Source: Pristiophorus japonicus
Lineage: Eukaryota
Direction of reading: 5' to 3'
DNA: 64,000 bases
Assembly (NCBI RefSeq): GCF_044704955.1
Contig: NC_092008.1
Location: 2,418,001-2,482,000, forward strand
Position 1 is the stretch's first letter, and each line of letters starts with the position of its first letter. Below are positions 2,050-46,550 of the stretch, piece after piece. A program made the translations under genes and the position numbers. The notes under the pieces are model-generated. The model saw nothing but the letters and a program-made list of their open reading frames with translations, did no database searches and was not told the DNA's origin.

Positions 2050-2270
2050 AGGAAGAGGAAGTGAATGAATTGACGAAAGAAGCCTTGTCTGGTGTTGGCG
2101 AGGTTGGGCGATGTGAGTGCTGGGGGAGTTTCCAAGCCGACGGCTGTGTGTGGGAGGAGTCGGGTTGGTAAGCCGAGCGTCTGTACCTGAGCGATTCAGA
2201 ACCATTCCTCGCTTGGACGAGACACACCGACAGCCCAGACGGCTCGCCAATCCTTCGGCCTCCCGTCGAG
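2050..2270 (+). promoter_or_regulatory. Putative WB-like #1 promoter: ETS/PU.1 GAGGAAGTGAA (2055-2065), NF-kB GGGAGTTTCC (2124-2133), CCAAT (2247-2251)
   Basis: Consensus matches just upstream of the leader ATG. Confidence 0.45.
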
Positions 2271-2343
2271 ATGCCGGCTTGCTCCCGAGGGACCGTCCTG
2301 GTGGCGATGGTGACTGTCGTGGCCGCGGTGGAGGGCTGGAGCG
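2271..2343 (+). CDS. WB-like #1 exon 1, signal peptide MPACSRGTVLVAMVTVVAAVEGWS
   Basis: ATG at 2271, hydrophobic core, 73 nt (phase 1), donor GTAAGT at 2344; joins in frame to 16620 (G+AC = Asp). Confidence 0.8.
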
Positions 2344-14300: not shown

Positions 14301-17300
14301 TGGACTTGCTTCCACTCTAGTGGCACTGGTTTGCCGCACGCTCCTTCCGCTGCCTGCGCTGGGTTTCTGCACGCTCTCGGCGACGAGACTCGAGGCGCTC
14401 AGCGCCCTCCCGGATGCACTTCCTCCACTTAGGGCGGACTGGTCTTTGGGCCCAGGGACTCCCAGGTGTCGGTGGGGATGTTGCACTTTATCAGGGAGGT
14501 TTTGAGGGTGGTCCCTTGTAACGTTTCCTCTGCCCACCTTTGGCTCGCTTGCCCGTGAAGGAGTTCCGAGTAGAGCGCTTCCTTTGGGGAGTCTCGTGTC
14601 TGGGGGCATGAGGACAATGTGGCCCTGCCCAGCGGAGCTGGTCGAGTGTGGTCAGTGCTTCGATGCTGGGGATGTTGGGCCTGGTCGAGGACGCTAACGT
14701 TGGTGTGTCTGTTTGCAGTTGCGTTCCTGTGACTGCAAAAGCTTCTACAGAAATGTGAAGAGAAAAAGATTAGTGAAGACAAATGTAGGTCCCTTGCAGT
14801 CAGATTCAGGTGAATTTATAATGGGGAACAAAGAAATGGCAGAACAATTGAACAAATACTTTGGTTCTGTCTTCACGAAGGAAGACACAAATAACTTGCC
14901 GGAAATACTAGGGGACCGAGGGTCTAGTGAGAAGGAGGAACTGAAGGAAATCCTTATTAATCAGGAAATGATGTTCGGGAAATTGATGGAATTGAAGGCC
15001 GATAAATCCCCAGGGCCTGATAGTCTGCATCCCAGAGTACTTAAGGAAGTGGCCCTAGAAATAGTGGATGTATTGGTGATCATTTTCCAACAGTCTATCG
15101 ACTCTGGATCAGTCCCTATGGACTGGAGGGTAGCTAATGTAACAACACTTTTTAAAAAGGGAGGGAGAGAGAAAGCGGGTAATTATAGACCGGTTAGCCT
15201 GACATCAGTAGTGGGGAAAATGTTGGAATCAATTATTAAAGATGCAATAGCAGCGCATTTGGAAAGCAGTGACAGGATCGGTCCAAGTCAGCATAGATTT
15301 GTGAAAGGGAAATCATGCTTGACAAATCTTCTGGAATTTTTTGAGGATGTAACTGGTAGAGTGGACAAGGGAGAACCAGTGGATGTGGTGTATTTGGACT
15401 TTCAAAAGGCTTTTGACAAGGTCCCACACAAGAGATTGGTGTGCAAAATCAAAGCACATGGTATTGGGGGTAATGTACTGACGTGGATAGAGAACTGGTT
15501 GGCAGACAGGAAGCAGAGAGTCGGGATAAACGGGTCCTTTTCAGAATGGCAGGCAGTGACTAGTGGAGTGCCGCAGGGCTCAGTGCTGGGACCCCAGCTA
15601 TTTACAATATACATTAATGATTTAGATGAAGGAATTGAATGTAATATCTCCAAGTTTGCAGATGACACTAAGCTGGGTGGCGGTGTGAGCTGTGAGGAGG
15701 ATGCTAAGAGGCTGCAGGGTGACTTGGACAGGTTAGGTGAGTGGGCAAATGCATGGCACATGCAGTATAATGTAGATAAATGTGAGGTTATCCAGTTTGG
15801 TGGCAAAAACAGGAAGGCAGAATATTATCTGAACGGTGACAGATTAGGAAAAGGGGAGGTGCAACGAGACTTGGGTGTCAGGGTACATCAGTCATTGAAA
15901 GTTGGCATGCAGGTACAGCAGGCGGTGAAGAAGGCAAATGGCATGTTGGCCTTCATAGCGGGAGGATTTGAGTATAGGAGCAGGGAGGTCTTACTGCAGT
16001 TGTACAGGGCCTTGGTGAGACCACACCTTGAATATTGTGTTCAGTTTTGGTCTCCTAATCTGAGGAAGGACGTTCTTGCTATTGAGGGAGTGCAGCGAAG
16101 GTTCACCAGACTGATTCCCGGGATGGCAGGACTGACATATGAAGAAAGACTGGATCGACTGGGCTTGTATTCACTGGGATTTAGAAGAATGAGAGGGGAC
16201 CTCATAGAAACATATAAAATTCTGACGGGATTGGACAGGTTAGATGCAGGAAGAATGTTCCCGATGTTGGGGAAGTCCAGAACCAGGGGTCACAGTCTAA
16301 GGATAAGGGGTAGGTCATTTAGGACCGAGATGAGGAGAAACTTCTTCACTCAGAGAATTGAGAACCTGTGGAATTCTCTACCGCAGAGAGTTGTTGAGGC
16401 CAGTTCGTTGGATATATTCAAGAGGGAGTTAGATGTGGCCCTTACGGCTGAAGGGATCAAGGGGTATGGAGAGAAAGCAGGAAAGGGGTACTGAGGGAAT
16501 GATCAGCCATGATCATATTGAATGGTGGTGCAGGCTCGAAGGGCCGAATGGCCTACTCCTGCACCTACTTTCTATGTTTCTATATTACTATGATTCCTCT
16601 GGGTATTTTTCTCTTGCAGACATGCACCTGTTCCACGTGCAGTGCGCGTGCGTTTACCACGACCGTCGGGTGGTCGAGATATCTTGGCAAGACGCCTTCG
16701 ACGGCGCCACTGTCCTGTACTATGACGTCGCCAACAAGACGTTTGTCGCCACCCGGCCGATCGCCCAGGGGGAAGTGGCGAGGCGTAACTCGGACCCAAG
16801 CTACCTCGCGTCGATACCACGCCGTATCGAGGCGCTCTGCGATAAAATTAAACACGCCGCCACCACGAGCAACACCACGCTGCCAAAAATGGGTAAGGTC
16901 GTTTATAAACACCGCAACCGTGGGCAGTAAATTCCACTCGGACAGTTCCCAAGATGTTAATTTTAGCCTCGGAACATTTCCAGCGACGGGAACAGCAAAG
17001 TTCAGTTGTCGCACGTTGACACTGGAGTGCAATGCAAAGGGAAACCTTCCACGCGCGAGAACACGGGCACAACTGAATATCCCGTGCGATGGAGCTGGCT
17101 TTGTCAAAGAAAGACCCGCATTACGATAGCGCCTTGCACGACCACCGGACGTCCCAAAGCGCCTCACAGGCAATGGCGTGCTATCGGAGTGCGCTCACTG
17201 TTGTAATGTGGGGAACGCCAACCTGCGCACAGCAAGATCCCACACACACAGACGTGACAAATGACCCGGATCGTCTGTTGGTCGAGGGATAAGTATTGGC

Positions 17301-20300: not shown

Positions 20301-23300
20301 GTAAAGCTCCCTCTACACTGTCCCATCAAACACTCCCAGGGCAGGTACAGCACAGGGTTAGATACAGAGTAAAGCTCCCTCTACACTGTCCCATCAAACA
20401 CTCCCAGGGCAGGTACAGCACGGGGTTAGATACAGAGTAAAGCTCCCTCTACACTGTCCCATCAAACACTCCCAGGGCAGGTACAGCACAGGGTTAGATA
20501 CAGAGTAAAGCTCCCTCTACACTGTCCCATCAAACACTCCCAGGGCAGGTACAGCACGGGGTTAGATACAGAGTAAAGCTCCCTCTACGCTGTCCCATCA
20601 AACACTCCCAGGGCAGGTACAGGGGGTTAGATACAGAGTAAAGTTCCCTCTACACTGTCCCATCAAACACTCCCAGGGCAGGTACAGGGGGTTAGATACA
20701 GAGTAAAGCTCCTTCTACACTGTCCCATCAAACACTCCCAGGACAGGTACAGGGGGTTAGATACAGAGTAAAGCTCCCTCTACACTGTCCCATCAAACAC
20801 TCCCAGGGCAGGTACAGGGGGTTAGATACAGAGTAAAGTTCCCTGTACATGGCCCACGGTATAACCTGCTGTCTGTCCTTGTCTGTTTTCACAGCTCCCA
20901 TGTCCATCAACACCTTTGTTCGGACGGAAGGCGGGCGGGATTATTTGGTGTGCTTGGCGACGAACTTCTTTCCCCGTGAGATTGACCTGAGATGGGTCAG
21001 AGACGGGGGAGGGGCTGTCCAGGGAGCAGACAGGACTCGGGTGGTACCTCAAAGGGATGGGACCTTTCAGGCCTGGAGTGTCCTGCCCTTGGCCGGAGGT
21101 GCTGACCGTTCGACCTCCTGTCAAGTGGAACACGCGGCCATCAACGGCAAACTCGTGGTGCAACTCGGTAAGTTCAGCAACTCGGGGAAGCTCAGACACA
21201 GAGGTCGCCGTAAGACCCAACCGTGATATCTCTAACACCCCAAACACACAACACACGCTGTAAATGGCCCCGAGCAGAACTGTATCACATGACCTTGACA
21301 CATGACCTTTTATTGTCACTGCATCAGTAGTAGTTATTACATCAGAAGTCCATTACACTTTCTCCCTCCTTATTGAAGAAGTAATCATCACAGAGGATGT
21401 AACGAACAGGATGGATAAAGGGGAACCAGTGGATGTGGTATATTTGGATTTCCAGAAGGCATTTGACAAGGTGCCACATAAAAGGTTACTGCACAAGATA
21501 AAAGTTCACGAGGTTGGGGGTAATATATTAGCATGGATAGAGGATTGGCTAACTAACAGAAAACAGAGAGTCGGGATAAATGGGTCATTCTCTGGTTGGC
21601 AACCAGTAACTAGTGGGGTGCCACAGGGATCAGTGCTGGGTCCCCAACTATTTACAATCTATATTAACGACTTGGAAGAAGGGACTGAGTGTAACGTGGC
21701 CAAGTTTGCTGACGATACAAAGATGGGAGGAAAAGCAATGTGTGAGGAGGACACAAAAAATCTGCAAAAGGACACAGACAGGCTCAGTGAGTGGGCAAAA
21801 CATTTGGCAGATGGAGCATAATGTGGGAAAGTGTGAGGTCGTTCACTTTGGCAGAAAAAAAAATCAAAGAGCAAGTTATTATTTAAATGGAGAAAGAGTG
21901 CAAAGTGCCGCAGTACAGCGGGACCTGGGGGTTACTTGTACATGGAACACAAAAGGATAGTATGCAGGTACAGCAAGTGATCAGGAAGGGCCAATGGTAT
22001 CTTGGCCTTTATTGCAAAGGGGATGGAGTATAAAAGCAGGGAAGTCTTGCTCCAGTTATACATTGAATGGCGGTGCAGGCTCGAGGGGCCGAATGGCCTA
22101 CTGATCCTATTCCCGGACACCACCCGGTTCGGGTTCCCATCAGCGGGGAACTTCGGCGATACTGTTCTTGCGGTGAACAGCTGGCCCAGTAACTGTGCTC
22201 TCTTCAGATCGGAACAGGAATGCTGAGAATGAAACTTTGATCACCATCGGAGCTGTGCTGGGGATACTGGGACTGAGCGCTGCTGTGGTGACCACGATCG
22301 TGTATCACTGCGCCATCAACCGTAAGCACCTTGCGCCCGTTACCAACGATCGTTAATGTCGCGGGTTTAATTGGGGGTCTGATGCGATGGCGCCTTTCGT
22401 GCTGACTTTAGGGGAGAGCACAAATGTGTTTCCACTCACTGCCTGTGTTTCTGGTGCGTGTAAAAATGGGGCTTTTAGTATGTCGAGGGGGAGTGTTCTT
22501 TTACTGTTGGTTCCCGGGGCTGGGGGCGTCACTGGCAAGGCCGGCATTTATTGCCCGTCCGCTAATCGCCCGCGAGAAGGTGGCGCTGACCCTTATACAA
22601 CTGAGGGGCTCGCTGGGCCAGGTCAGAGGGCAGTTACAAGTCACGCACACAGTGCTGTGGGCCTGGACTCGCATAGCGGCCAGACCGGGTAAGGGCGGTA
22701 GATTTCCTTCCCTGAAGGACACATTACTGAACCCGATGGGTTTTAACGGCAAGTTCCGTTACCGTCAGAGCTGTTCAATTGAGTTCAAACTCCCCAGCCG
22801 CCCTGAACTGGTGTCCCTGGATCGTTAGTCCAGGGCTCAGAATTCCTGGCCCAGTAATATACCCACCGTCATCATCGGCAGTCCCTCGGGATCGAGGAAG
22901 ACTTGTTTCCACTCCTAACACGAGTCCTTAGGTGGCTGAACAGTCCAATACGGGAGCCACAGTCCCTGTCACAGGTGGGACAGACAGTGGTTGAGGGAAG
23001 GGGAGGGTGGGACTGGTTTGCCGCACGCTCCTTCCACTGCCTGCGCTTGGTTTCTGCACGCTCTCGGCGACGAGACTCGAGGTGCTCAGCGCCCTCCCGG
23101 ATGCACTTCCCTCCACTGAGGGCGGGACTGGTCTTTGGGCCCAGGGACTCCCAGGTGTCGTTGGGGATGTTGCACTTTATCAGGGAGGCTTTGAGAGTGG
23201 TCCCTGTAACGTTTCCTCTGCCCACCTTTGGCTCGTTTGCCCGTGAAGGAGTTCCGAGTAGAGCGCTTGCTTTGGGAGTCTCGTGTCTGGGGGACATGCG

Positions 23301-26300
23301 GACAATGTGGCCCTGCCCAGCGGAGCAGGTTGAGTGTACATAACCACTGTGCTACCACACCCCACAGGACAAGGGATGGGTTAACGAAAGGAGATAGTCA
23401 AAATAAACGGGATCTTTAAACAGATACGCTTTGAAATTAAAGTTTGAGGTATGACGGAGTAAAGGTGTGTCAGTCTGGCTCAGTGGGCAGCTCCCTCGCC
23501 TCAGCGTCAGAAGGTCGTGGGGTCAAGTCCCACTCCAGGAACTCGAGTACAGAATCCAGGCTGACCCTCCCAGTGCAGTACTGAGGGAGTGCCGCAGTGT
23601 CGGAGGGGCAGTACTGAGGAGCGCTGCAGTGTTGGAGAGGCAGTACTGAGGGAGTGCCGCACTGTCGAAGGGGCGGTACTGAGGGAGTGCCGCAGTGTCG
23701 GAGGGGCAGTACTGAGGAGCGCTGCACTGTCGAAGGGGCGGTACTGAGGGAGTGCCGCACTGTCGGAGGGACGGTACTGAGGGAGTGCCGCACTGTCGGA
23801 GGGGCGTTACTGAGGGAGCGCCGCACTGTCGGAGGGGCAGTACTGAGGAGCGCTGCACTGTCGAAGGGGCGGTACTGAGGGAGTGCCGCACTGTCGGAGG
23901 GGCAGTACTGAGGGAGTGCCGCACTGTCGGAGGGACGGTACTGAGGGAGTGCCGCACTGTCGGAGGGGCGTTACTGAGGGAGCGCCGCACTGTCGGAGGG
24001 GCAGAACTGAGGGAGTGCCGCACTGTCGGAGGTGCGGTACTGAGGGAGCGCCGCACTGTCGAAGGGGCAGTACTGAGGGAGTGCAGCACTGTCGGAGGGG
24101 CAGTACTGAGGGAGCGCCGTACTGTCGGAGGGGCGGTGCTGAGGGATTGCCGCAGTATCGGAGGGGCGGTACTGAGGGAGCGTCGCACTGTCGGAGGGGC
24201 GGTACTGAGGGAGTGCCGCACTGTCGGAGGGGCAGTACTGAGGGAGTGCCGCACTGTCGGAGGGGCAGTACTGAGGGAGCGCCGCACTGTCGGAGGTGCC
24301 GTATTTCGGATGAGACATTAAACCGAGTCCCGTCTGCCCTCTCGGGTGGATGTAAAAGATCCCGGGGCCACTATTGGAAGAAGAGCAGGGGGAGTTCTCC
24401 CCGGTGTCCTGGGGCCAATATTTATCCCTCGACCAACATCACTAAAACAGACGATCTGGGTCATTATCACATCACTGTGTGTGGGAGCTTGCTGTGCGCA
24501 AATTGGCGTTTCCCACATTGCAACAGCGAGCGCACTCCGATAGTACCTCATTGGCTGTGAGGCGGTTTGGGACGTCCTGAGAGGGTGTTAGGCGCTATAT
24601 AAATGCTTCATTCTTCTTTCAAAGACTTCACCAGTTTAAATGATAATNNNNNNNNNNNNNNNNNNNNNNNNNNNNNNNNNNNNNNNNNNNNNNNNNNNNN
24701 NNNNNNNNNNNNNNNNNNNNNNNNNNNNNNNNNNNNNNNNNNNNNNNNNNNNNNNNNNNNNNNNNNNNNNNNNNNNNNNNNNNNNNNNNNNNNNNNNNNN
24801 NNGAGAGCGAGGAGGGGAGGGAGCAGAGGAGGAGATTAAAAGCCGGTGAAATAAAAGAGGGAGGGGGAGGGTACATTTGAAAGACGCCCGTCCCTGATGA
24901 CAAACTGCTCACCGTACCTTTCTCATTCCAGGTTGCAAACGCTCCAAGATCCAGTCGACGGGTGAGATGCACAGTCCTTTAACTCTGAATCATTTTGGGG
25001 CCAGGGGGGGTATATTTTGGGGTGGAGAGGGTTAACAGTTTGCCGATCCTTCTCGTTGCAGCCAAGTTCACGAGGCGTACGGGACCATGTGGATCGAATC
25101 CCTGCCAGGCCAGTGTGCGGAGCAGTGAATCCAACTCCTCCAACTCCAGCGGCTCCTCGGGTAAGGGAGGTATTCGTAAACCGTGTCACTGATCAACGGC
25201 GGCACAATTCGGGGCAGGAGGGGGGTCACTCGGTCCCTCGAGTCTGTTACATTAGGGACAGGAGGAGGCCGTTCAGCCCCTCGAGCCTGTTACATTAGGG
25301 ACAGGAGGAGGCCGTTCAGCCCCTCGAGCCTGTTACATTAGGGACAGGAGGAGGCCGTTCAGCCCCTCGAGCCTGTTACATTAGGGACAGGAGGAGGCCG
25401 TTCAGCCCCTCGAGCCTGTTACATTAGGGACAGGAGGAGGCCGTTCAGCCCCTCGAGCCTGTTACATTAGGGACAGGAGGAGGCCGTTCAGCCCCTCGAG
25501 TCTGTTACATTAGGGACAGGAGGAGGCTTTTCAGCCCCTCGAGTTTGTTACATTAGGAACAGGAGGAGGCCGTTCAGCCCCTCGAGCCTGTTACATTAGG
25601 AACAGGAGGAGGCCGTTCAGCCCCTCGAGCCTGTTACATTAGGGACAGGAGGAGGCTTTTCAGCCCCTCGAGTTTGTTACATTAGGGACAGTAGGAGGCC
25701 GTTCAGCCCCTCGAGCCTGTTACATTAGGAACAGGAGGAGGCCGTTCAGCCCCTCGAGCCTGTTACATTAGGGACAGGAGGAGGCCGTTCAGCCCCTCGA
25801 GCCTGTCGGAGTGGCGGTACTGAGGGAGCACCGCACTGTCGGAGGGGCAGTACTGAGGGAGCGCCGCACTGTCGGAGGGGCGGTACTGAGGGAGTGCCGC
25901 ACTGTCGGAGGGGCGGTACTGAGGGAGTGCCGCACTGTCGGAGGGGCTGTATTTCGGATGAGACATTAAACCGAGGCCCCGTCTGCCCTCTCGGGTGGAT
26001 GTAAAAGATCCCGGGGCCACTATTAGAAGAAGAGCAGGGGGAGTTCTCCCCGGTGTCCTGGGGCCAATATTTATCCCTCGACCAACAGACGATCTGGGTC
26101 TTTATCACGTCTCTGAGTGTGGGATCTTGCTGTGCACAAGTTGGCTGCCGCGATGACATCAGTGAGCGCACTTCAAAGGGTACTTCATTGGCTGTGAGGC
26201 ACTTTGAGACGTCCGGTGGACGTGAAAGGCGCTATCTAAATGCAAGTCCTTTCATTATCTCAATAAACCTCGATCGATCGGACGAGGGTCTGGGGTTAGG

Positions 26301-26464
26301 GGGGGGGTGGGGAGAGGTTGCGGGGGAGGGGGTGAATAAGGAAATAACCGTTGTATCTGTCCAGCTCGTTGGACGACAATCCAAGGCCTGAGCTTCGAGG
26401 CGGATGAACTGACAATTTATTCTCTTCCCTTTCAGCCGAGGGGTTAACGAAATCCACCGCCTGA
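2271..26464 (+). CDS. MHC W-category-like beta chain gene (WB-like #1), 7 coding exons: 2271-2343, 16620-16892, 20895-21167, 22208-22321, 24932-24961, 25062-25160, 26436-26464
   Basis: All introns are GT-AG and phase 1; internal exons of 273/273/114/30/99 nt are multiples of 3 and give one open frame: leader, MHC beta1/alpha2-like domain, Ig C1, TM, cytoplasmic tail. The N-run at 24648-24802 could hide an extra exon. Confidence 0.85.
2400..2697. repeat. 37-bp minisatellite (ggaggaggttacagagatagggaggggtgtaggggct) derived from L2-like LINE 3' region; resumes 11969-12640; further arrays 30565-31145 and 52080-54420
   Basis: Tandem units; reverse strand reads PPYLCNLLQP next to L2-like LHWLPV..DFKIL. 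Confidence 0.9.
3897..5714 (+). pseudogene. Gypsy pol 5' part (protease, RT, RNase H)
   Basis: ORF 3897-5939 up to LAAYDY, where the CR1 begins. Confidence 0.9.
6191..7138 (+). CDS. CR1 ORF1 (zinc finger/leucine zipper plus SGNH esterase)
   Basis: CxxC..CxxC; IVIGDS, PGA, HIGTND, DGLHL. Confidence 0.9.
   Translation: MAGELGRVLCSSCTMWELRDASGVPDDYVCGKCIRLQLLTVRVTELELKVDSLWSIHDAENDVSITCSELVLPQGKGPQPDREWKTSRKSRARKVVQGSPAVIPLQNRYTALGTVEGNDSSGEGSSSQVHGTVAGSAAQEGKKKSGRAIVIGDSIVRGIDRRFCGRNRDSRMVCCLPGARVKDVSERVQDILKWEGEQPVVVVHIGTNDIGKKRDEVLRNEFKELGAKLKSRTSKVVISGLLPVPRDSQSRNRRIAQMNTWLEQWCSREGFKFLGHWDRFWGRWDQYKPDGLHLGRTGTNVLGGVFASAVGEDLN
7216..10122 (+). CDS. CR1 ORF2 (APE endonuclease plus reverse transcriptase), uninterrupted
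   Basis: NARS, ITETWL, GDFN, SDH; YRPVSLTS, LDFQKAFD, GVPQGS, FADD. Confidence 0.95.
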   Translation: MRKSVGQRNPRQRTKRATVQQNSKRTKGVNKTSLKALCLNARSIHNKVDELIVQIDVNKYDVIGITETWLQDDQGWELNIQGYSTFRKDRIKGKGGGVALLVKEEINAIVRKDISLDDVESIWVELQNTKGQKTLVGVVYRPPNSNRDVGEGIKQEIRGACNKGVAVIMGDFNMHIDWASQTGSNTVEEDFLECIRDGFLDQYVEEPTRGEAILDWVLCNERGLISNLIVRGPLGKSDHNMVEFCIRMENETVNSETMVQNLKKGNFEGMRRELARIDWRMILRGLTVDGQWQTFRDRMDEVQQLYIPVWRKNKKGKVAQPWLSREIRDSIKAKEVAYKLARNSSEPGDWEKFRTQQRRTKGLIRTGKMEYEKKLAGNIKADCKSFYRYVKRKRLVKTNVGPLQSESGEVITGNKEMADQLNKYFGSVFTKEDTNNLPDIKGVRGSSKEEELREIFISREIVLGKLMGLKADKSPGPDGLHPRVLKEVALEIADALTVIFQHSIDSGSVPMEWRVANVTPLFKKGGREKTGNYRPVSLTSVVGKMMESIIKDVIAVHLENGDMIGPSQHGFVKGKSCLTNLLEFFEDVSSKVDKGEPVDVVYLDFQKAFDKVPHKRLMCKVKAHGIGGSVLTWIENWLSDRKQRVGVNGYFSEWQAVTSGVPQGSVLGPQLFTLYINDLDEGIKCSISKFADDTKLGGSVSCEEDAIRLQSDLDRLGEWANAWQMKYNVDKCEVIHFGGKNRETDYYLNGDRLGKGKVQRDLGVMVHQSLKVGMQVQQAVKKANGMLAFIARGFEYRGREVLLQLYRALVRPHLEYCVQFWSPNLRKDILAIEGVQRRFTRLIPGMAGLTYQERLDQLGLYSLEFRRMRGDLIETYKILTGLDRLDAERMFPMLGKSRTRGHSLRIRGKPFRTEMRRNFFTQRVVNLWNSLPQKVVEANSLNIFKRELDEVLTTRGIKGYGEKAGRGY
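10226..11694 (+). pseudogene. Gypsy pol 3' part (integrase) with internal stop at ~10648
   Basis: YTIWHRPG..ADALSRLP..H..HPG..DYAGP..SDNGP..SNGQA. Confidence 0.9.
12640..13500 (-). mobile_element. L2-like LINE 3' fragment with internal ~50-bp tandem expansion (~12710-13200); similar fragment at ~30270-31370
   Basis: LHWLPVQQRLDFKILILVYKSL and repeated VLTRTESRSPITP. Confidence 0.75.
14730..16582 (+). mobile_element. 5'-truncated CR1 LINE (RT part open), ending ~40 bp before the WB beta1 exon
   Basis: ORF 14713-16494 is close to ORF2 of the 5715-10225 element; tttctatg tail. Confidence 0.92.
16620..16892 (+). CDS. WB-like #1 exon 2, beta1 domain (DMHLFHVQCACVY...WQDAFDG...LCDKIK...TLPKM)
   Basis: Acceptor ttttctcttgcag, donor gtaagg, 273 nt; strand-1 Cys plus helix Cys and a QDAFDG motif as in class I alpha2/class II beta1; sequons NKT and NTT. 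Confidence 0.9.
17110..19410 (-). mobile_element. Deu-domain-type SINE with expanded internal 33-bp array (18096-19295), interrupted by a CR1 3' fragment (17558-18095, -)
   Basis: tRNA-like head, 33-bp units and core gagacattaaaccgaggccccgtctgcc. Confidence 0.75.
19680..20210. repeat. 43-bp minisatellite derived from the CR1 3' end (also 25235-25805, 32432-33130, 35615-36310, 49030-49427, 63080-63785)
   Basis: Unit ttacattagggacaggaggaggccgttcagcccctcgagcctg. Confidence 0.9.
20218..20846. repeat. ~68-bp tandem array just upstream of the WB beta2 exon
   Basis: Unit gggttagatacagagtaaagctccctctacactgtcccatcaaacactcccagggcaggtacagcac, about 9 copies. Confidence 0.9.
20895..21167 (+). CDS. WB-like #1 exon 3, Ig C1 beta2 domain with class I alpha3-like motif
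   Basis: Acceptor gttttcacag, donor gtaagt, 273 nt; LVCLATNFFP..I.L.W.RDG, VVPQRDGTFQAW, SCQVEH. Confidence 0.93.
21390..22110 (+). mobile_element. Degenerate CR1 RT fragment
   Basis: DVVYLDFQKAFD..FADD with frameshifts. Confidence 0.85.
22208..22321 (+). CDS. WB-like #1 exon 4, connecting peptide and TM (DRNRNAENETLITIGAVLGILGLSAAVVTTIVYHCAIN)
   Basis: Acceptor ctctcttcag, donor gtaagc, 114 nt; hydrophobic stretch with GxxxGxxG glycines. Confidence 0.88.
23469..24620 (+). mobile_element. Deu-domain-type SINE with expanded 33-bp array; related copies ~25805-26250, 28659-30050, 49740-50180 (-), 58517-59400 (-)
   Basis: Head tggctcagtgg..ggtcaagtcccactcc, array, conserved core, tail ggcgctatataaatgc. 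Confidence 0.8.
24648..24802. other. N-run (155 nt); others at 33325-33779 and 36508-36962 (455 nt each)
   Basis: Seen directly. Confidence 1.
24932..25160 (+). CDS. WB-like #1 cytoplasmic exons 5 (24932-24961, RCKRSKIQST) and 6 (25062-25160, AKFTRRTGPCGSNPCQASVRSSESNSSNSSGSS)
   Basis: Acceptors tctcattccag and tctcgttgcag, donors gtgaga and gtaagg; both phase 1-1 and in frame with the TM exon. Confidence 0.75.
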
Positions 26465-26465: not shown

Positions 26466-27390
26466 GTAATGGTTCCGTCACGTATGGCCACGGTTACCAC
26501 GGTGATGTCTGTAAGCGAGGAGGGGGGGGAACGGGAGTGTGGGCTGTCCACGAGGGTCCCGGAAATCTCCGGGGCAGACCGACAATCCCAGAACGGTTCT
26601 GGACAACGAGCGGGGGTTCGATAAACCCCCTGCACCCCCTGGGAGGTGGTACTGAGGGAGCGCCGCACTGTCGGAGGGGCGGTACTGAGGGAGCGCCGCA
26701 CTGTCGGAGGGGCGGTACTGAGGGAGTGCCGCACTGTCGGAGGGGCGGTACTGAGGGAGTGCCGCACTGTCGGAGGGGCGGTACTGAGGGAGTGCCGCAC
26801 TGTCGGAGGGGCGGTACTGAGAGAGTGCCGCACTGTCAGAGGGGCGGTACTGAGGGAGCCCCGCACTGTCGAAGGGGCGGTACTGAGGGAGTGCCGCACT
26901 GTCGGAGGGGCGGTACTGAGGGAGCGCCGCTCTATCGGAGGGGCGGTACTGAGGGAGTGCCGCACTGTCGGAGGGGCAGTACTGAGGGAGTGCCGCACTG
27001 TCGGAGGGGCGGTACTGAGGGAGTGCCGCACTGTCGGAGGGGCGGTACTGAGGGAGTGCCGCACTGTCGGAGGGGCGGTACTGAGGGAGCGCCGCTCTAT
27101 CGGAGGGGCGGTACTGAGGGAGCGCCGCACTGTCGGAGGGGCGGTACTGAGGGAGCGCCGCACTGTCGGAGGGGCGGTACTGAGGGAGTGCCGCACTGTC
27201 GGAGGGGCGGTACTGAGGGAGTGCCGCACTGTCGGAGGGGCGGTACTGAGGGAGTGCCGCACTGTCGGAGGGGCGGTACTGAGGGAGTGCCGCACTGTCG
27301 GAGGGGTGGTACTGAGGGAGTGCCGCACTGTCCGAGGGGCGCTACTGAGGGAGTACCTCCTCCTTTAATCTCCTTCTCCTTCCCGCCGTA

Positions 27391-27900
27391 GATCGCACGG
27401 ACCACGCCGACGATGATGAACGTTCCCGGCCGAGTCTGAAGACTTTATTTCCGCGTGTGTCCGCCTCAATTTTCTGGGTTTTTTTGTTTCCGACGAGTGC
27501 CCTCGAGGCTCACTTGCTCCGCGATCTGTTTGTGTGTTTTCCCGCTGGGGGTGGGGGGGGGGGGGGGTGGGGTTTGGGATGAATCGCGCCCATTGGCGGT
27601 CGGAATTGGATCCCGCCGTTTCGGAGACACCGTCAGCGCTCCAACGCCGATTTTACCGCCTGGCTCCGACTGTCCAAACACGAGGGAGCAGCGCTAACGG
27701 TGTTGGTGCTCACCACCCACTCGGGCAGGAGCGCGAGAGGCCCGACCGAATCTCCCGACGGCAGCCTACCGCCACCCTGGCTGCAAACCGGGAAGTAAAA
27801 AGTAGTAACTGAAACTTCTCCGACACACAAACTTCTGCCCCCCACCCCTCTTAAATCTAACGAAAACAAGGCGGAAATCAATAAAGAGAGATACTTACCT
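27391..27900 (+). other. Putative 3'UTR exon of WB-like #1
   Basis: Pyrimidine-rich acceptor ending ccgtag at 27390; AATAAA at 27880-27885. Confidence 0.5.
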
Positions 27901-33857: not shown

Positions 33858-33939
33858 ATGAAGCTCGGTCCCATTGCCCCCAGCTGTATCTACACCTTCA
33901 TCCTCCTCACCCGCCCCGCGGGGCTTGGCTCAGCCATGC
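33858..33939 (+). CDS. WA-like leader exon copy 1 ([27 protein letters not shown])
   Basis: ATG at 33858, 82 nt (phase 1), donor gtgagt. Confidence 0.75.
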
Positions 33940-39900: not shown

Positions 39901-42900
39901 CAGTACTGAGGGAGCGCTGCACTGTCGGAGGGGCAGTACTGAGGGAGTGCCGCACTGTCGGAGGGGCAGTACTGAGGGAGCGCTGCACTGTCGGAGGGGC
40001 AGTACTGAGGGAGATTGTATTAATCCCACAACCAGCGCCAGTAACAACAGGTGACCTGCTGTGGTCACTTCTCTTTGTAGCCCCTGTTCCAGTTGATGGG
40101 AAGATCCTGGTGACCCTGTACTTCACGGATGACCCAAGCCTCCCGGCGATCGTGGTACAGGCCCAGACAGCAGACCGACTTGTCCTGCACTACGACAGCA
40201 CGATGACGAGCGTCCAGTTATTGGTCAGCGGCCTGGAGCCCTACCACAGCCTCCTGGACGAGCTCTTGCAGAAGAACGAAGACAATACCGTCAAACTGCA
40301 ACGCAGCCTAATGCGTGACCTCACCGCGCTGACCAACGACTCGCGTCCCCACAACGGTCAGTCCTGGTCGGGGGCGGGGTGGGGGGAGGGAGGGGGGGTT
40401 GCTGTCATATCTTAACAACATAGCTTTTAGCCTGTGACAGCGCAGTGAGTCGCTCCCTCAGTACTGCCCCTCCGACAGTGCGGCACTCCCTCAGTACCGC
40501 CCCTCCGACAGTGCGGCACTCCCTCAGTACCGCCCCTCCGGCAGTGCGGCACTCCCTCAGTACCGCCCCTCCGACAGTGCGGCACTCCCTCAGTACCGCC
40601 CCTCCGACAGTGCGGCACTCCCTCAGTACAGCCCCTCCGGCAGTGCGGCACTCCCTCAGTACCGCCCCTGCGACAGTGCGGCACTCCCTCAGTACTGCCC
40701 CTCCGACAGTGCGGCACTCCCTCAGTACCGCCCCTCCGGCAGTGCGGCACTCCCTCAGTACCGCCCCTCCGGCAGTGCGGCACTCCCTCAGTACCGCCCC
40801 TCCGACAGTGCGGCACTCCCTCAGTACCGCCCCTCCGACAGTGCGGGGCTCCCTCAGTACTGCCCCTGCGACAGTGCGGCACTCCCTCAGTACTGCCCTT
40901 CCGACAGTGCGGCGCTCCATCAGTACTGCCCCTCCGACAGTGCGGCGCTCCCTCAGTACTGCTCCTCCGACAGTGCGGCACTCCCTCAGTACTGCCCCTC
41001 CGACAGTGCGGCGCTCCCTTAGTACTGCCCCTCCGACAGTGCGGCGCTCCATCAGTACTGCACCTCCGACAGTGCGGCGCTCCCTCAGTACCGCCCCTCC
41101 GACAGTACGGTGCTTCCTCAGTACCGCCCCTCCGACAGTGCGGGGCTCCCTCAGTACTGTCCCTCCGACAGTGCGGCGCTCCCTCAGTACCGCCCCTCCG
41201 ACAGTGCGGCGCTCCCTCAGTACCGCCCCTCCGACAGTGCGGTGCTCCCTCAGTACCGCCCCTCCGACAGTGCGGGGCTCCCTCAGTACCGCCCCTCCGA
41301 CAGTGCGGGGCTCCCTCAGTACCGCCCCTCCGACAGTGCGGGGCTCCCTCAGTACCGCCCCTCCGACAGTGCGGGGCTCCCTCAGTACTGCCCCTCCGAC
41401 AGTGCTGCGCTCCCTCAGTACCGCCCCTCCGACACTGCGGCGCTCCCTCAGTACCGCCCCTCCGACAGTGCGGGGCTCCCTCAGTACCGCCCCTCCGTCA
41501 GTGCGGCACTCCCTCAGTACCGCCCCTCCGACACTGCGTCGCTCCCTCAGTACCGCCTCTCCGACAGTACGGCACTCCCTCAGTACTGCCCCTCCGACAG
41601 CGCAGTCAGTCTCTGAAACTCAGCCCGACTGGACTCCCAGTGTGCCCCAGCGATGGGCCGCTGGGTGGACCGAGGCGAGACCTCCTTCCTGGGGCCCTAT
41701 CTACCTCCTCAGGCCGACATTAAAGACCGCGTCGGCACTGTTGGTGGAAGAGAGGGCACCTCTGCTCAACCGTCACCTGAACAACCCCAAAAGACATCGC
41801 CTGTGTGTTGTGGAATGTTGCCGGTTGACATTGTCCCGTACATAACCACAAAGACTGCGCTGGACCAGGCTGCTGCTGGGACTGGAGAATCTTAGCTATG
41901 AGGAAAGGTTGGAGAGGCTGGGTTTGTTTTCTTTGGAACAGAGGAGGCTGAGGGGAGACTTTATTGAGGTGTATAAAATTATCAGGAGCCTGGATAGTCA
42001 TTATCCCTCATCGGCAGTCCCTCGGGATCGAGGAAGACTTGCTTCCACTCTTAACACGACTCCTTCGGTGGCTGAACAGCCCAATATGGGAGCCACAGTC
42101 CCTGTCACAGGGGGGACAGACAGTGGTTGATGGAAGGGGAGGGTGGGACTGGTTTGCCGCACGCTCCTTCCGCTGCCTGCGCTTGGTTTCTGCACGCTCT
42201 CGGCGACGAGACTCGAGGTGCTCAGCGCCCTCCCGGATGCACTTCCTCCACTTAGGGCGGGACTGGTCTTTGGGCCCAGGGACTCCCAGGTGTCGGTGGG
42301 GATGTTGCACTTTATCAGGGAGGCTTTGAGGGTGGTCCCTTGTAACATTTCCTCTGCCCACCTTTGGCTCGTTTGCCCGTGAAGGAGTTCCTAGTAGAGC
42401 GCTTGCTTTGGGGAGTCTCGTGTCTGGGGGACATGCGGACAATGTGGCCCTGCCCAGCGGAGCTGGTCGAGTGTGGTCAGTGCTTCGATGCTGGGGATGT
42501 TGGCCTGGTCGAGGACGCTAACGTTGGTGCGTCTGTCCTCCCGGGGGATTTGCAGGATCTTGCGGAGACAGCGTTGGTGGTATTTCTCCAGCGACTTGAG
42601 GTGTCTACTGTACATGGTCCGTGTCTCTGAGCCATACAGGAGGGCGGGTATCACTACAGCCCTGTAGACCATGAGCTTGGTGGTAGGTTTGAGGGCCTGG
42701 TCTTCGAACACTCTCTTCCTCAGGCGGCCGAAGGCTGCACTGGCGCACTGGAGGTGGTGTAGGACCTCATCGTCGAGGTCATCCCTTGTTGATAAGAGGC
42801 TCCCGAGGTATGGGAAATGGTCCACGTTGTCCAGGGCCGGGCCGTGGATCTTGATGACTGGGGGGTGGGGGGCAGTGCAGGGCTACGGACCGAGAGCTGG

Positions 42901-45900
42901 AAAGTGGGATTAGGCCGGGATGGCTCTTGGTCGGCCGGCAGACACGATGGGCCGAAATGGCCTCCGTCCATTCTGTAAATCTCTCCGCTCTTATGATGTG
43001 CGACGACCAGATCGGTGGAAGGTGAACTGGTTGGGCTTGGGTCTACTCCCCTGTTCTTCTACCCCACCCAGACTCGCGTCCCCCATGTAGTAATGAGCTC
43101 CCGGTTCTTCCCACCGAAATGTAATCTCACATTTATCTGTGTCGGGCCTCATTTGCCAGTTCCGCGCCCGTTCCGCGAGTTTATCCCCAGTGTTGGACAG
43201 CCCCCTCCTCCCCAGTTTGTCCACGAGGGTCCTGACGCTCCGGGTCCCCGAGCTCCACGTTAGCGGAGCGGACGATGCCCGTGCGTGAGTTCTTTTCACG
43301 TGAGGGTTGGCCATTGCACAACGGGCCGCCACACGGCCTTGACGGAGCGAGGTCTGGGTCCCGTGGCAAGGCGGGGGGGGGCGGTCCGAGGCGATGGGGC
43401 CACCAGGCCCCACTGTGTGAGCCTGGTGCGAGATCTTGGCCGCAAGCTGGGTAGCGTTCTTGGTGGTCCGAGGCTTGGTTGGAGAGGGGGGGGCGGGCAT
43501 TGGGAGGGTCAGTGGTCAAACGGCGCCCCCCCTCCCCCACGATCTGCGAGAGAACAGCTCCGCAGGGTCGGGCTACAAAGGAGCTGGAGGGACCGACCAC
43601 CTCAACCTGTCCTCTCCTCCCTTCTCAACCGGTGCTTGCAAGCACAATGGCCTCCGACCTTCCAAGCCGTTTGATCAAGCGCTGAAGTTGTTGGAGAGTC
43701 CGTGACGAACTATTTCACGCCCTCCTTTTCAGAGATCGGCGAGGTCCTCCTGTACACGGAGCGGGCCGCCAGCCTCGGTCAGCCCAACGTTCTGGCCTGC
43801 CTGGTCACCGGGTTTTTCCCGCCGGCGGTCAACGTGACCCTGTCCGAGAACGACCGGCCCCTCTCCGGCAGAGTCAACTCATCGCGGGTCTCCATCGGGG
43901 AGGGCTGGCGCTTCCAGGTGCTGCACTACGCCGCGATCCGGCCGGCGGCCGGAGACGTGTACTCCTGCACGGCAGTGCACGGCATCAGCAAGGAGGAGAG
44001 AGTCGCCTACTGGGGTAAGAGTTCTCAAACATCCGGGCGGGTAAATCAGCCTCAACTCCCCCCCCCCCTCCGAGGGCAGCCCGTCGATCGGGGACCGGTA
44101 GAGGGACCCTTCGCTGTGAGGCTGCTCTGTGGGACGGGTGCGTGGAGAACACAAGGGACATGATCCGATCTTGGGCTCAGCTCCACTTCCCCGCCCGCCC
44201 CTTCACTCCCTTATCGCTCAACAATCTGTCTGTCTCCGCCTTAAATATATTCAAATGACCCAGCCCCTCCACAGCTCTCTGGGGCAGAGAATTCCACAGG
44301 TTCACCAGAAGAAATTCCTCCTCAACATAGAAACATAGAAAATAGGTGCAGGAGCAGGCCATTCGGCCCTTCGAGCCTGCACCGCCATTCAATATGATCA
44401 TGGCTGAACATGCAACTTCAGTACCCCATTCCTGCTTTCTCTCCATACCCCTTGATCCCTTTAGCCGTAAGGGTCACATCTAACTCCCTTTTGAATATAT
44501 CTAACGAACTGGCCTCAACAACTTTCTGTGGTAGAGAATTCCACAGGTTCACAATTCTCTGAGTGAAGAAGTTTCTCCTCATCTCGGTCCTAAATGGCTT
44601 ACCCCTTATCCTTAGACTGTGACCCCTGGTTCTGGACTTCCCCAACATCGGGAACATTCTTCCTGCATCTAACCTGTCCAATCCCATCAGAATTTTATAT
44701 GTTTCTATGAGATCCCCTCTCATCCTTCTAAATCCCAGTGAATATAAGCCTAGTCGATCCAGTCTTTCTTCATATGTCAGTCCTGCCATCCCGGGAATCA
44801 GTCTGGTGAACCTTCGCTGCACTCCCTCAATAGCAAGAATGTCCTTCCTCAGATTAGGAGACCAAAACTGAACACAATATTCCAGGTGAGGCCTCACCAA
44901 GGCCCTGTACAACTGCAGTAAGACCTCCCTGCTCCTATACTCAAATCCTCTCGCTATGAAGGCCAACATACCATTTGCCGCCTTCACCGCCTGCTGTACC
45001 TGCATGCCAACTTTCAATGACTGATGAACCATGACACCCAGGTCTCGTTGCACCTCCCCTTTTCCTAATCTGTCACCATGGGCGGCCCCTTATTCTAAGA
45101 TCATGCCCCCGAGTTCTAGTCTCCACTCTCAGGATGGCTGGACTGACATATGAGGAGACCCTGGATCAACTGGGCCTTTATACACTGGAGTTTAGAAGGA
45201 TGAGAGGGGATCTCAGAGAAACATATAAAATTCTGATGGGACTGGACAGGTTAGATGCGGGAAGAATGTTCCCGATGTTGGGGAAGTCCAGAACCAGGGG
45301 TCACAGTCTAAGGATAAGGGTTTGGCCATTTAGGATCGAGATGAGGAGAAACTTCTTCACTCAGAGAGTTGTTGACCTGTGGAATTCCCTGCCGCAGAGA
45401 GTTGTTGAGGCCAGTTCATTGGATATATTCAAGAGGGAGTTAGATGTGGCCCTTACAGCTAAAGGGATCAAAGGTTATGGAGAGAAAGCAGGAATGGGGT
45501 AACTGAGGGAATGATCAGCCATGAGCTTATTGAATGGTGGTGCAGGCTCGAAGGGCCGAATGGCCTACTCCTGCACCTATTTTCTATGTTTCTATCAGTG
45601 GAAACATCCTCTCTGCATCCACCTTGTCGAGCTCCCTGATAATCTTCCACGTTTCGATAAGATCACCTCTCATTCTTCTGAATTCCAATGAGTAGAGGCC
45701 CAACCTCCTCAACCTTTCCTCATAAGTCAACCCCCTCATCCCCGGAATCAACCGAGTGAACCTTCTCTGAACTGCCTCCAAAGCAAAGTGTATCCTTTCG
45801 TAAATATGGAAACCAAAACTGCACGCAGTACTCCAGGTGTGGCCTCACCAATACCTTATCTAGTTGTAGCAGGACTTCCTTACTCATATACTCCAACACC

Positions 45901-46550
45901 CCCCCCCCGTCCTACAATAAAGGCCAAGTGGAAGGGGAGAGTGTAGTGTTTGCAAGCACTCGAGTAATGACTCCACGAGGTAAGGGACTGCACTTGAACT
46001 GTTGTGACCTGAGTCCATTTCTTGCTGCTCCTGAATGAGGGTACAGTAAGCCGGGCTCCCTTTTAGAATTGGTTACCTGCGGTGTGCAGGTGACCTCTGG
46101 GTCTCCACCAGTTGCACCCTCTGGTGGTACAGGTATGGTGTATACAGTGTGAAGGTACACTCATTGGCCTTATGTAACTGTACATTGAGTGTACAGGGTA
46201 TACACGTACACAACAGAGAGGGTAGCAGTGGATCAGAGCGGAGCCCGAGCAGAGTTTGGGGTGTGACTTGTTCCTCGCGGAGGGAGCTGGGGACTGGGGC
46301 CAGTCGGCCTGTGATTCTCACCGCCCTGACCGAGCCTGCCGTTTGATTTGCAGAGCCCGACGTGCAGGACGACCCGGAGGGTGGAGACCAGCAGGACCCG
46401 GGCGGGCTGGCCGTGTTGGTGTGTGGACTCGTTGTGGGGTTACTCGGGACCATGGCTGGTCTGGGCCTGTGCTTCTGTTCCAGAGTGGTGGACCGGGAGT
46501 CTCAGATGCTGCAACTTAGGCCCCAAGCCTCGTCCTCAACTTCGGCCTGA
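33858..46550 (+). CDS. MHC W-category-like alpha chain gene (WA-like): leader 33858-33939 or 37041-37122, alpha1 40081-40356, alpha2 43733-44014, TM/cyt 46354-46550
   Basis: GT-AG phase-1 introns and a continuous open frame; beta2m-like alpha2 domain with a class II alpha-type TM. Confidence 0.88.
37041..37122 (+). CDS. WA-like leader exon copy 2 (same peptide)
   Basis: Copy of 33858-33939 offset by 3183 bp. Confidence 0.78.
37155..40012. repeat. 33-bp SINE-derived minisatellite, largest array (others 26648-27352, 28659-29725, 31460-32190, 33972-35372, 40437-41605, 47449-47620, 58517-59295)
   Basis: Unit gcactgtcggaggggcggtactgagggagcgcc; source of the long spurious ORFs. Confidence 0.95.
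40081..40356 (+). CDS. WA-like alpha1 domain exon ([15 protein letters not shown]...LVLHYDS...[12 protein letters not shown])
   Basis: Acceptor ctctttgtag, donor gtcagt, 276 nt; strands then amphipathic helix, no Cys, C-terminal sequon NDS at the usual MHC alpha1 position. Confidence 0.82.
43733..44014 (+). CDS. WA-like alpha2 Ig C1 exon, beta2-microglobulin-like
   Basis: Acceptor ctccttttcag, donor gtaaga, 282 nt; [54 protein letters not shown]. Confidence 0.93.
44175..45900. mobile_element. Cluster of nested CR1 3' fragments on both strands in WA intron 3
   Basis: ORFs 44418-45053 (-), 45134-45502 (+), 45584-45781 (-). Confidence 0.85.
45942..46215 (-). mobile_element. Solo LTR with 5-bp TSD GAGAG; related LTR at ~13700-13943
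   Basis: TG...CA termini, gagag on both flanks, shared ccaccagaggg core. Confidence 0.7.
46354..46550 (+). CDS. WA-like connecting peptide/TM/cytoplasmic exon
   Basis: Acceptor gatttgcag; acidic stalk, then [15 protein letters not shown] (GxxxGxxGxxxG as in class II alpha TM); TGA at 46548; AATAAA near 47957. Confidence 0.88.

What the first reader, a model, noticed from the sequence alone, without database searches (positions are those of the whole stretch)
20895..21167. Beta-chain Ig domain carries the class I alpha3 motif instead of the class II beta2 Trp
VVPQRDGTFQAW matches HLA class I alpha3 TRPAGDGTFQKW (P235, D238-G239, Q242, W244, including beta2m contacts), whereas class II beta2 reads NGDWTFQ. 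The G-strand Trp is absent (KLVVQL). No class I alpha1 exon was found between the leader and beta1, so this is not a class I heavy chain.
Basis: partly seen in the sequence, partly recalled or inferred. Interest (0 to 1): 0.8.

Follow-up and report, generated by a model that had tools for sequence, protein, structure and literature searches.

The report
Shark W-category MHC beta-chain Ig exon

Summary
Window 20895-21167 (+) is an intact phase-1 exon with AG/GT borders. It encodes a C1-set Ig domain (Pfam 4.6e-14). Its ...VVPQRDGTFQAW... stretch aligns without gaps to HLA-A alpha3 ...TRPAGDGTFQKW..., and the exon has no end-of-domain Trp.

The gene has class II beta architecture: leader, one membrane-distal exon, this Ig exon, a CP/TM exon and three tail exons, 296 codons in sum. 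The exons are collinear with 293-296 aa shark proteins in which beta1 follows the signal peptide directly. Intron 1 holds retroelement ORFs and no alpha1-like exon.

All 31 relatives I aligned have the Pro (position 57). None has Trp at position 61 (18 have Gly). Only 1 of 31 keeps the terminal Trp. In a careful tree the domain sits inside the elasmobranch clade of this family (support 97/98).

A partner alpha-chain gene lies downstream with a beta2-microglobulin-like Ig exon (Y8, L37, W61).

These are the published defining features of W-category WB chains (Okamura et al. 2021, PMC8713811). Verdict: a new species copy of a known family. No RNA run was listed, so expression is untested. Earlier notes of this scan report other W-category genes elsewhere in the same genome.

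The parts
2271..2343 (+). Leader (signal peptide) exon of the WB gene, MPACSRGTVLVAMVTVVAAVEGWS + 1 base, donor GTAAGT
   Evidence: Sequence read. Its end matches the leader/beta1 junction of Heptranchias P0171. Not supported by RNA.
16620..16892 (+). beta1 (membrane-distal) exon, 273 nt, phase 1/1, acceptor TTGCAG, donor GTAAGG
   Evidence: blastp gives 63% identity to Heterodontus P0168 residues 24-113 and 57% to Heptranchias P0171 residues 26-115. tblastn. No Pfam MHC_I or MHC_II_beta hit. Weak PDB hits only, to class I-type alpha2 domains.
20895..21167 (+). beta2 Ig-like C1-set exon (the finding), 273 nt, phase 1/1; Pro57 and Gly61, no Trp61, no terminal Trp
22208..22321 (+). Connecting peptide / transmembrane exon, ...LITIGAVLGILGLSAAVVTTIVYHCAIN, with a GxxxG motif
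   Evidence: donor placed at 22322. 72-73% identity to P0171 and P0168. The motif IGAVLGILG or a near variant occurs in 20 of 23 relatives examined.
24932..24961 (+). Cytoplasmic exon 1 (CKRSKIQST)
   Evidence: matches the CKQFNIKST-type stretch of relatives.
25062..25160 (+). Cytoplasmic exon 2 (AKFTRRTGPCGSNPCQASVRSSESNSSNSSGSS)
26436..26464 (+). Cytoplasmic exon 3 with stop (AEGLTKSTA*)
   Evidence: C-terminal ...ADGLTKSxA is conserved in relatives.
40081..40356 (+). alpha1 exon of the neighbouring WA (alpha-chain) gene
Evidence: Only translated here; it is stop-free in one frame. Not otherwise tested.
43733..44014 (+). alpha2 Ig exon of the WA gene, beta2-microglobulin-like (Y8, L37, W61): the presumed partner of the beta2 domain
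   Evidence: Pfam C1-set 8.5e-17. Best PDB matches are beta2-microglobulin at 7e-16, with Y, L and W aligned.
46425..46460 (+). GxxxGxxGxxxG motif of the WA transmembrane exon
   Evidence: This motif type is described for class II alpha and W-category alpha TMDs in PMC13399432 (passages).

Best explanation
The exon encodes the membrane-proximal Ig-like (beta2) domain of a W-category MHC beta chain (WB) of an elasmobranch. Shown here: the gene has class II beta architecture, with leader, beta1, beta2, CP/TM and a three-exon Ser/Cys-rich tail. Inferred from the family's published description and from the residues present: the chain pairs with a membrane-anchored WA alpha chain whose Ig domain resembles beta2-microglobulin, and the pair is held together by class I-type interdomain contacts. 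In that model Pro57 of beta2 (the P of VVPQRDG) accepts the hydrogen bond from Tyr8 of the alpha2 domain, as alpha3 P235 does with beta2m. Position 61 is a small Gly, so beta2 does not push a Trp under the alpha1/beta1 platform as class II does. The platform is propped instead by Trp61 of the WA alpha2 domain, as beta2m W60 does in class I. The ligand and the immune function are unknown for shark W molecules.
For: Exon borders, frame and C1-set domain.

Gapless alignment of the motif to HLA-A and MR1 alpha3. None of the 60 PDB sequences shown is named as a class II beta chain (65 reach E<=1e-10).

Foldseek with the AlphaFold model (pLDDT 87.8): every row shown is a class I-family heavy chain. 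VIA-align over 48,161 chains: ranks 1-10 are class I-family alpha3 domains (Z 12.7-14.1), and the best class II beta is at rank 14 (Z 12.3, 24% identity).

Of 1.84 billion representatives, 949 hit at E<=1e-3. The best single-domain hits are 218-298 aa proteins of sharks, rays, basal teleosts and a lungfish, with the Ig domain at about residues 117-206. That taxon range is the one the paper gives for W-category.

The exons are collinear with P0171 and P0168. The summed CDS is 891 nt, or 296 codons, the same length as P0171.

Family alignment: P57 in 31 of 31, W61 in 0 of 31, G61 in 18 of 31.

Careful ML tree of 64 rows: the window's beta2 lies inside a clade of 22 elasmobranch relatives (UFBoot 97 / SH-aLRT 98) and inside the whole family of 31 (97/81) (the quick tree agrees).

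The partner WA alpha2 exon is beta2m-like, with Y8, L37 and W61 aligned. The WA TM carries GxxxGxxGxxxG and the WB TM carries GxxxG (PMC13399432 passages).

The paper's defining features (P57, G61 not W61, class II architecture, linked WA/WB genes) were read.
Against: No sequence that the paper itself names WB was available. The supplement with accessions and alignments is closed, and no database hit carries the name W-category. The family label therefore rests on features, taxon range and clade, not on a named anchor.

No RNA run was listed, so splicing and expression are inferred from homologous RefSeq models.

The domain sits on a long end branch (0.61 against a median of 0.16), with at most 54% identity to any relative. 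It is a divergent copy.

WA lies downstream on the same strand. The paper describes head-to-head pairs, so the true partner may be another WA gene outside the window.

In beta1, the residue that I take from memory of HLA-A numbering to be the D37 equivalent appears to be Thr. One class I-type platform contact may therefore be altered; this was not rigorously aligned.

Structurally the domain is a generic C1-set fold, and class II beta2 is only about 2 Z units behind class I alpha3.
Confidence: 0.9

Rival explanations
1. It is the alpha3 exon of a nonclassical class I heavy chain whose alpha1 exon was missed. It could be too divergent to detect or hidden in intron 1.
For: The best PDB sequence and structure matches of the domain are class I-family alpha3. 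Automatic names of several relatives say 'class I alpha chain-like', 'MR1-like', 'HFE homolog' or 'ZAG-like'. The full-length relative P0168 aligns over beta1+beta2 to class I alpha2+alpha3 in one stretch. My alpha1 search used only two kinds of query, so its sensitivity is limited.
Against: Relatives of 293-301 aa go from the signal peptide straight into the beta1 homologue at residue 24-29, and the window's leader end matches that junction. Intron 1 shows only retroelement ORFs and no alpha1-like hit (best E 0.049, inside an RT ORF). The TM has the class II beta-type GxxxG. A membrane-anchored beta2m-like alpha-chain gene lies next door.
Confidence: 0.02
2. It is a conventional (classical, or DM/DO-like nonclassical) class II beta chain that lost Trp61 on its own.
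For: The architecture is class II beta. Many relatives are auto-named 'class II beta chain-like'. Lungfish and tarpon relatives give sub-threshold Pfam MHC_II_beta hits (1e-3 and 8.4e-3).
Against: The paper states that conventional class II beta invariably has W61. Here W61 is absent in the window and in 31 of 31 relatives. None of the 179 proteins fetched holds a DW[TS][FY] motif. The window's beta1 has no Pfam MHC_II_beta hit even at E<=1. Class I alpha3 outranks class II beta2 in sequence and in structure. The linked alpha chain is beta2m-like.
Confidence: 0.03
3. It is a W-category WB gene copy that is no longer functional: a silent or decaying paralogue in a repeat-rich array.
For: Long end branch and only 54% best identity. 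Introns are swollen by retroelements and satellites. An orphan beta1-like remnant lies elsewhere in the window. No RNA run was listed.
Against: All seven coding exons are open, in phase and flanked by AG/GT. The sum is 296 codons with a stop at the family's usual C-terminus. Both Ig cysteines, the core Trp, P57 and Q64 are kept.
Confidence: 0.1

Closest known systems
W-category MHC beta chain (WB), Okamura et al. 2021 PNAS (PMC8713811)
   Same: Class II beta exon and domain architecture. beta2 has Pro57 and Gly61 and no Trp61. A linked WA gene has a beta2m-like alpha2 domain (W61, Y8, L37). The TM has a GxxxG motif. The taxon is elasmobranch.
   Different: It is a divergent copy, at most 54% identical in beta2 to any protein fetched. 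It keeps a Trp in FQAW, as class I alpha3 does; only 2 of 31 relatives do. The nearest WA in the window is in tandem orientation, not head-to-head. The named lineage (the paper's SI naming) could not be assigned.
MHC class I heavy chain alpha3 domain (HLA-A, MR1, HFE, FcRn, CD1)
   Same: Best sequence and structure matches. Shared P...DGTFQ.W motif. Presumed contact of the Pro with a Tyr of a beta2m-type domain.
   Different: No alpha1 domain in the chain. The partner is a membrane-anchored alpha chain, not free beta2-microglobulin. The end-of-domain Trp is missing.
Conventional MHC class II beta chain beta2 domain (HLA-DR/DQ/DP/DM beta)
   Same: Same place in the chain and the same exon structure. 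C1-set fold (VIA Z 11.0-12.3). CQVEH strand-F motif.
   Different: It lacks the Trp61 that the paper calls invariant in class II beta2. It has the class I-type Pro57. Its beta1 is not recognised by Pfam MHC_II_beta.

Membership tests
W-category MHC beta chain (WB) | Class II beta-type architecture: signal peptide, one membrane-distal domain, one Ig-like C1 domain, CP/TM/CY, each on its own exon or exons | tested here: met
   Exons at 2271-2343, 16620-16892, 20895-21167, 22208-21321-type CP/TM (22208-22321) and three CY exons, all phase 1 with AG/GT borders. Collinear with P0171 and P0168.
W-category MHC beta chain (WB) | beta2 has Pro at position 57 (class I alpha3 P235 equivalent) | tested here: met
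   Pro aligned to the Pro of HLA-A and MR1 alpha3. 31 of 31 relatives have it.
W-category MHC beta chain (WB) | beta2 has no Trp at position 61, mostly Gly | tested here: met
   Gly in the window, aligned to the Gly of HLA-A 'agdgtfq'. Relatives: G 18, R 7, K 3, Q 2, S 1, W 0 of 31.
W-category MHC beta chain (WB) | beta1 shares class I alpha2-type residues (Q6, A32, G35, D37 in the paper's numbering) | tested here: inconclusive
   The only PDB hits of beta1 are weak ones to class I-type alpha2 domains (ULBP E 0.03; YF1 E 0.7). The full relative P0168 aligns to alpha2+alpha3. The ...QDAFDGAT... stretch keeps the A and G but seems to have T where I recall D. The paper's Dataset S1 numbering is in a closed supplement.
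W-category MHC beta chain (WB) | Linked WA alpha-chain gene whose alpha2 has W61, Y8 and F/L37 (beta2m-like) | tested here: met
   Exon 43733-44014 has beta2m as its best PDB match (7e-16), with Y, L and W aligned. The WA TM motif is at 46425. Its orientation is tandem, not head-to-head.
W-category MHC beta chain (WB) | Transmembrane region with the beta-chain-type single GxxxG motif | tested here: met
   IGAVLGILG in exon 22208-22321. The same or a near variant occurs in 20 of 23 relatives examined. The feature is as described in PMC13399432 (passages).
W-category MHC beta chain (WB) | Clusters with sequences that the authors named WB | not testable with these tools
   Accessions and alignments are in the closed supplement, and no fetched protein is named W-category. 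It does cluster (97/98) with elasmobranch proteins that share all the features, including one from great white shark, a species the paper lists.
W-category MHC beta chain (WB) | Forms a heterodimer with WA and reaches the cell surface | not testable with these tools
   Shown only for tiger salamander in the paper.
MHC class I heavy chain | alpha1 domain exon between the leader and the alpha2-type exon | tested here: not met
   No alpha1-like hit in 2344-16619. Homologues have no room for one. Sensitivity is limited for a very divergent alpha1.
Conventional MHC class II beta chain | Invariant Trp61 in beta2, and a beta1 recognised as MHC_II_beta | tested here: not met
   Gly at position 61. No Pfam PF00969 hit on the beta1 exon at E<=1.

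The most novel reading that the evidence does not exclude
This divergent copy sits on a long branch. It has the class I-like Trp in FQAW, shared with only 2 of 31 relatives. It may also have a changed platform contact in beta1. It could represent a distinct WB sublineage with its own WA partner and a different interdomain geometry or ligand. It would then be a natural variant for asking which class I-type contacts are essential in a class II-built molecule.
Probability: 0.1. Interest if true: 0.4.

Novelty: new member of a known kind. Interest (0 to 1): 0.15.

Why it matters
W-category molecules are the proposed intermediate between MHC class II and class I. Every further intact WA/WB pair, especially from a squalomorph shark, adds data on how conserved the class I-type interfaces are. 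This exon adds one more WB beta2 with Pro57 and Gly61. It also shows that public annotation of the family is chaotic: relatives are named class I, MR1, HFE, ZAG or class II beta. It opens no new question.

Tried and rejected
RNA evidence. The look-up of sequencing runs (kind rna, the 273-base exon) listed no run. Read laying therefore could not be used, and the leader-to-beta1 splice remains inferred.

Named anchor. I looked for proteins named W-category or WB among the hits and found none. The paper's accessions are in SI Table S3, and Datasets S1-S3 hold the numbered alignments. These supplements are closed and may hold the exact lineage name and residue numbering.

Class II beta comparators. 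I could not obtain any conventional class II beta sequence as a stored protein. The region search had only 17 candidates. One search was blank. 0 of 179 fetched proteins has DW[TS][FY]. The domain tree therefore lacks class II beta2. The class I versus class II comparison rests on the PDB sequence ranking, Foldseek and VIA-align. The paper itself reports low resolution for the alpha3/beta2 group.

Hidden alpha1 exon. tblastn of a platypus class I alpha1, the window's WA alpha1 and WB beta1 against intron 1 gave only noise.

Second WB Ig exon. A profile of 32 beta2 domains, run against 1174 stop-free pieces of the window, found only this exon and the WA alpha2 exon.

Rows dropped from the trees: hits longer than 460 aa; 10 isoforms or cluster-mates (P0152-P0156, P0158-P0161, P0164); and, in the careful tree only, 5 long-branch rows (P0033, P0088, P0100, P0125, P0141).

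The species name (Japanese sawshark) comes from earlier notes of this scan and was not tested here.
Full report
WHAT IS THERE. Window 20895-21167 (+) is bounded by ...cacAG and GTaagt. Of the three frames only the one starting at 20897 is open. It encodes 91 residues with the two Ig cysteines and the core Trp, and it matches Pfam C1-set at 4.6e-14. The domain ends ...INGKLVVQLG without a Trp.

IS THE CLASS I RESEMBLANCE REAL.
- PDB sequences. A phmmer search found 7891 distinct sequences at E<=0.01 and 65 at E<=1e-10. The 60 shown are class I or MR1 heavy chains (single-domain E about 3e-10), multi-domain Ig heavy chains whose scores add up over several domains, and one chain named as a TCR. 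None is named as a class II beta chain.
- Alignment. The alignment to HLA-A alpha3 has no gaps: 'rtrvvpqrdgtfqaw' over 'lvetrpagdgtfqkw'.
- Structure. An AlphaFold model of the exon, built with a 34-row alignment, has mean pLDDT 87.8. In Foldseek every row shown is a class I-family heavy chain. VIA-align 2 over 48,161 representative chains puts class I-family alpha3 domains (HFE, marsupial class I, CD1d, FcRn, H-2, MICA, chicken CD1, CD1e, shark UGA) at ranks 1-10 with Z 12.7-14.1. The best class II beta chain (HLA-DR15 beta) is at rank 14 with Z 12.3 and 24% identity.
- Reading. The resemblance is real but moderate. The fold is the generic C1-set fold, and the class I flavour lies mainly in the motif.

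WHAT GENE IT BELONGS TO.
- Exons on the + strand: a leader exon at 2271-2343 (MPACSRGTVLVAMVTVVAAVEGWS, donor GTAAGT); a membrane-distal exon at 16620-16892; this Ig exon; a CP/TM exon at 22208-22321; and three small tail exons at 24932-24961, 25062-25160 and 26436-26464 ending in a stop.
- All junctions are phase 1 with AG/GT. The lengths add to 891 nt, or 296 codons.
They were searched apart.
- Local blastp and tblastn put beta1, beta2, TM and tail collinearly on Heptranchias P0171 (296 aa: 26-115, 117-206, 209-244, 255-274) and Heterodontus P0168 (293 aa: 24-113, 115-203, 205-241, 252-271).
- In these and 13 other relatives printed, the beta1 homologue follows the signal peptide directly. 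The window's leader end (...VVAAVEGWS, then D-MHLFHVQC) matches Heptranchias ...VVCVVDGWSDMHLFHVQC.

IS THERE A HIDDEN ALPHA1 EXON.
- Intron 1 (2344-16619) holds ORFs with RT, RNase H and protease domains, LINE endonuclease plus RT, integrase, a second RT, and a GDSL-lipase-like ORF.
- I ran tblastn against it with a Pfam-verified class I alpha1 (platypus P0136), the window's own WA alpha1 and WB beta1. The best hit has E 0.049, covers 22 residues and lies inside the RT ORF.
- This cannot exclude a very divergent alpha1. Together with the homologues' architecture, it makes a class I heavy chain very unlikely.

THE FAMILY.
- The exhaustive HMMER search of 1.84 billion representatives gave 949 hits at E<=1e-3.
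- The highest totals are multi-domain proteins.
- The best single-domain hits are 218-298 aa proteins from sawfish, skates, epaulette shark and cloudy catshark (43-53% identity), then Denticeps, Cirrhinus, Megalops and the lungfish Protopterus.
- A further search with P0034 added bamboo shark, zebra shark, great white, bullhead shark, small-spotted catshark, sevengill shark, smooth-hound and devil ray.
- Their public names are contradictory: class I alpha chain-like, MR1-like, HFE homolog, ZAG-like, class II beta chain-like.
- Pfam recognises only their C1-set domain at threshold. Lungfish and teleost members give sub-threshold hits to the alpha2 half of MHC_I and to MHC_II_beta.
- In a MAFFT alignment of the Ig domains of 31 relatives, Pro57 is present in 31 of 31. 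Position 61 is G 18, R 7, K 3, Q 2, S 1, W 0. Gln64 is present in 31 of 31. The final column is Trp in 1 of 31 (the lungfish). The Trp of FQAW is shared by 2 of 31.
- None of the 179 fetched proteins has a DW[TS][FY] motif.
- A careful IQ-TREE tree (64 rows, 90 columns; the dropped rows are listed under Tried and rejected) places the window's domain in a clade with 22 elasmobranch relatives (UFBoot 97 / SH-aLRT 98) and within all 31 relatives (97/81). The quick tree of 69 rows agrees (SH-aLRT 97).
- The window's end branch is long (0.61 against a median of 0.16).

THE PARTNER.
- Downstream on the same strand lie an alpha1-type exon (40081-40356, only translated) and an Ig exon (43733-44014). 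The best PDB matches of the Ig exon are beta2-microglobulins (7e-16), with 'llYte' over 'qvYsr', 'nvtL' over 'eidL' and 'vsigegW' over 'lsfskdW'.
- A TM with GxxxGxxGxxxG lies at 46425.
- The WB TM carries IGAVLGILG (a GxxxG motif), shared or nearly shared by 20 of 23 relatives examined.
- PMC13399432 (passages read) states that the W-category alpha TMD has the class II alpha glycine string and that the beta TMD has a single GxxxG.

COMPARISON WITH WHAT IS KNOWN.
- Okamura et al. 2021 (PMC8713811; I read the outline and parts 1-3 of the Results and Discussion) define W-category MHC by four things. [quoted passage not shown]
- For WB beta2 they name exactly two features. One is P57, which in class I alpha3 hydrogen-bonds to beta2m Y8. 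The other is G61 in place of the W61 that is 'invariably' present in conventional class II beta2.
- They also report that the first W-category sequence ever seen was a lone shark Ig exon with class I-like features.
- The taxa of my hits (cartilaginous fish, non-euteleost teleosts, lungfish, and an axolotl protein as sister) match the distribution the paper gives and the axolotl note in PMC12619710 (passage).
- I could not tie the gene to a sequence the authors named, because their accessions and alignments are in closed supplements.

HOW IT MOST LIKELY WORKS.
- Shown: an intact WB-type gene, a beta2 domain with Pro57, Gly61 and no Trp61, and a neighbouring WA gene with Tyr8, Leu37 and Trp61.
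- Inferred from the paper's HLA-A2-based analysis: WB beta2 packs against WA alpha2 through the Pro57-Tyr8 contact. The alpha1/beta1 platform is supported from below by WA Trp61 and not by a beta2 Trp, so the heterodimer has class I geometry on a class II chassis.
- Unknown: ligand, receptor, expression.

EARLIER NOTES OF THIS SCAN. They report further W-category WA and WB genes on this window, next to it, and on other pieces of the same genome, and they call the species Japanese sawshark. I used them as leads only. The WA alpha2 claim I partly re-tested.

VERDICT. This is a new species copy of a known family, and interest is low.

Noticed in passing
window 2344-16619: Intron 1 of the WB gene is 14.3 kb and packed with retroelement ORFs: RT/RNaseH/protease at 3777-5936, LINE endonuclease+RT at 7114-10119, integrase at 10651-11691, RT at 14698-16491, and a GDSL-lipase-like ORF at 6188-7135.
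   Followed up: partly
window 58191-58466 (-): A second beta1-like exon on the minus strand matches a WB relative only weakly (E 0.003). No second WB-type Ig exon exists anywhere in the window. It looks like an orphan remnant of another WB copy.
   Followed up: partly
window 24932-26464 (+): The Ser/Cys-rich cytoplasmic tail on three small exons is not peculiar to this gene. The ...TAKFT...C...C..S.RS...S(N/S)-rich...ADGLTKSxA tail is conserved across elasmobranch relatives. Its function is unknown.
   Followed up: partly
P0021, P0027, P0151, P0034, P0166, P0179 and others: Public automatic names of this family are contradictory: class I alpha chain-like, MR1-like, HFE homolog, zinc-alpha-2-glycoprotein-like, class II beta chain-like. 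None says W-category.
   Followed up: no
P0112 (Ambystoma mexicanum, 428 aa): The axolotl protein named MR1-like has an extra N-terminal part, a match to the alpha2 half of Pfam MHC_I only, and a C1 domain. It is sister to the WB-like clade. It may be the axolotl WB with a mispredicted or genuinely added N-terminus.
   Followed up: no
window 17300-19400, 23400-24400, 26500-27400, 28600-29900, 31400-32300, 33900-35500, 37100-41800, 47300-47700, 49700-50400, 58400-59500: Long satellite arrays that stay open in several frames on both strands (translations like [10 protein letters not shown] / [11 protein letters not shown]) fill much of the introns and intergenic DNA. Three N gaps lie at 24648-24802, 33325-33779 and 36508-36962.
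   Followed up: no
window 2249-2253: A CCAAT pentamer lies 18 nt before the leader ATG. Whether the gene has an MHC-type SXY promoter module was not examined.
   Followed up: no
window 21045-21080 (FQAW): The Trp after FQ, as in class I alpha3 FQKW, is kept in this copy and in only 2 of 31 relatives (Hemiscyllium P0034, Stegostoma P0166). The others have R, K, T or G.
   Followed up: partly
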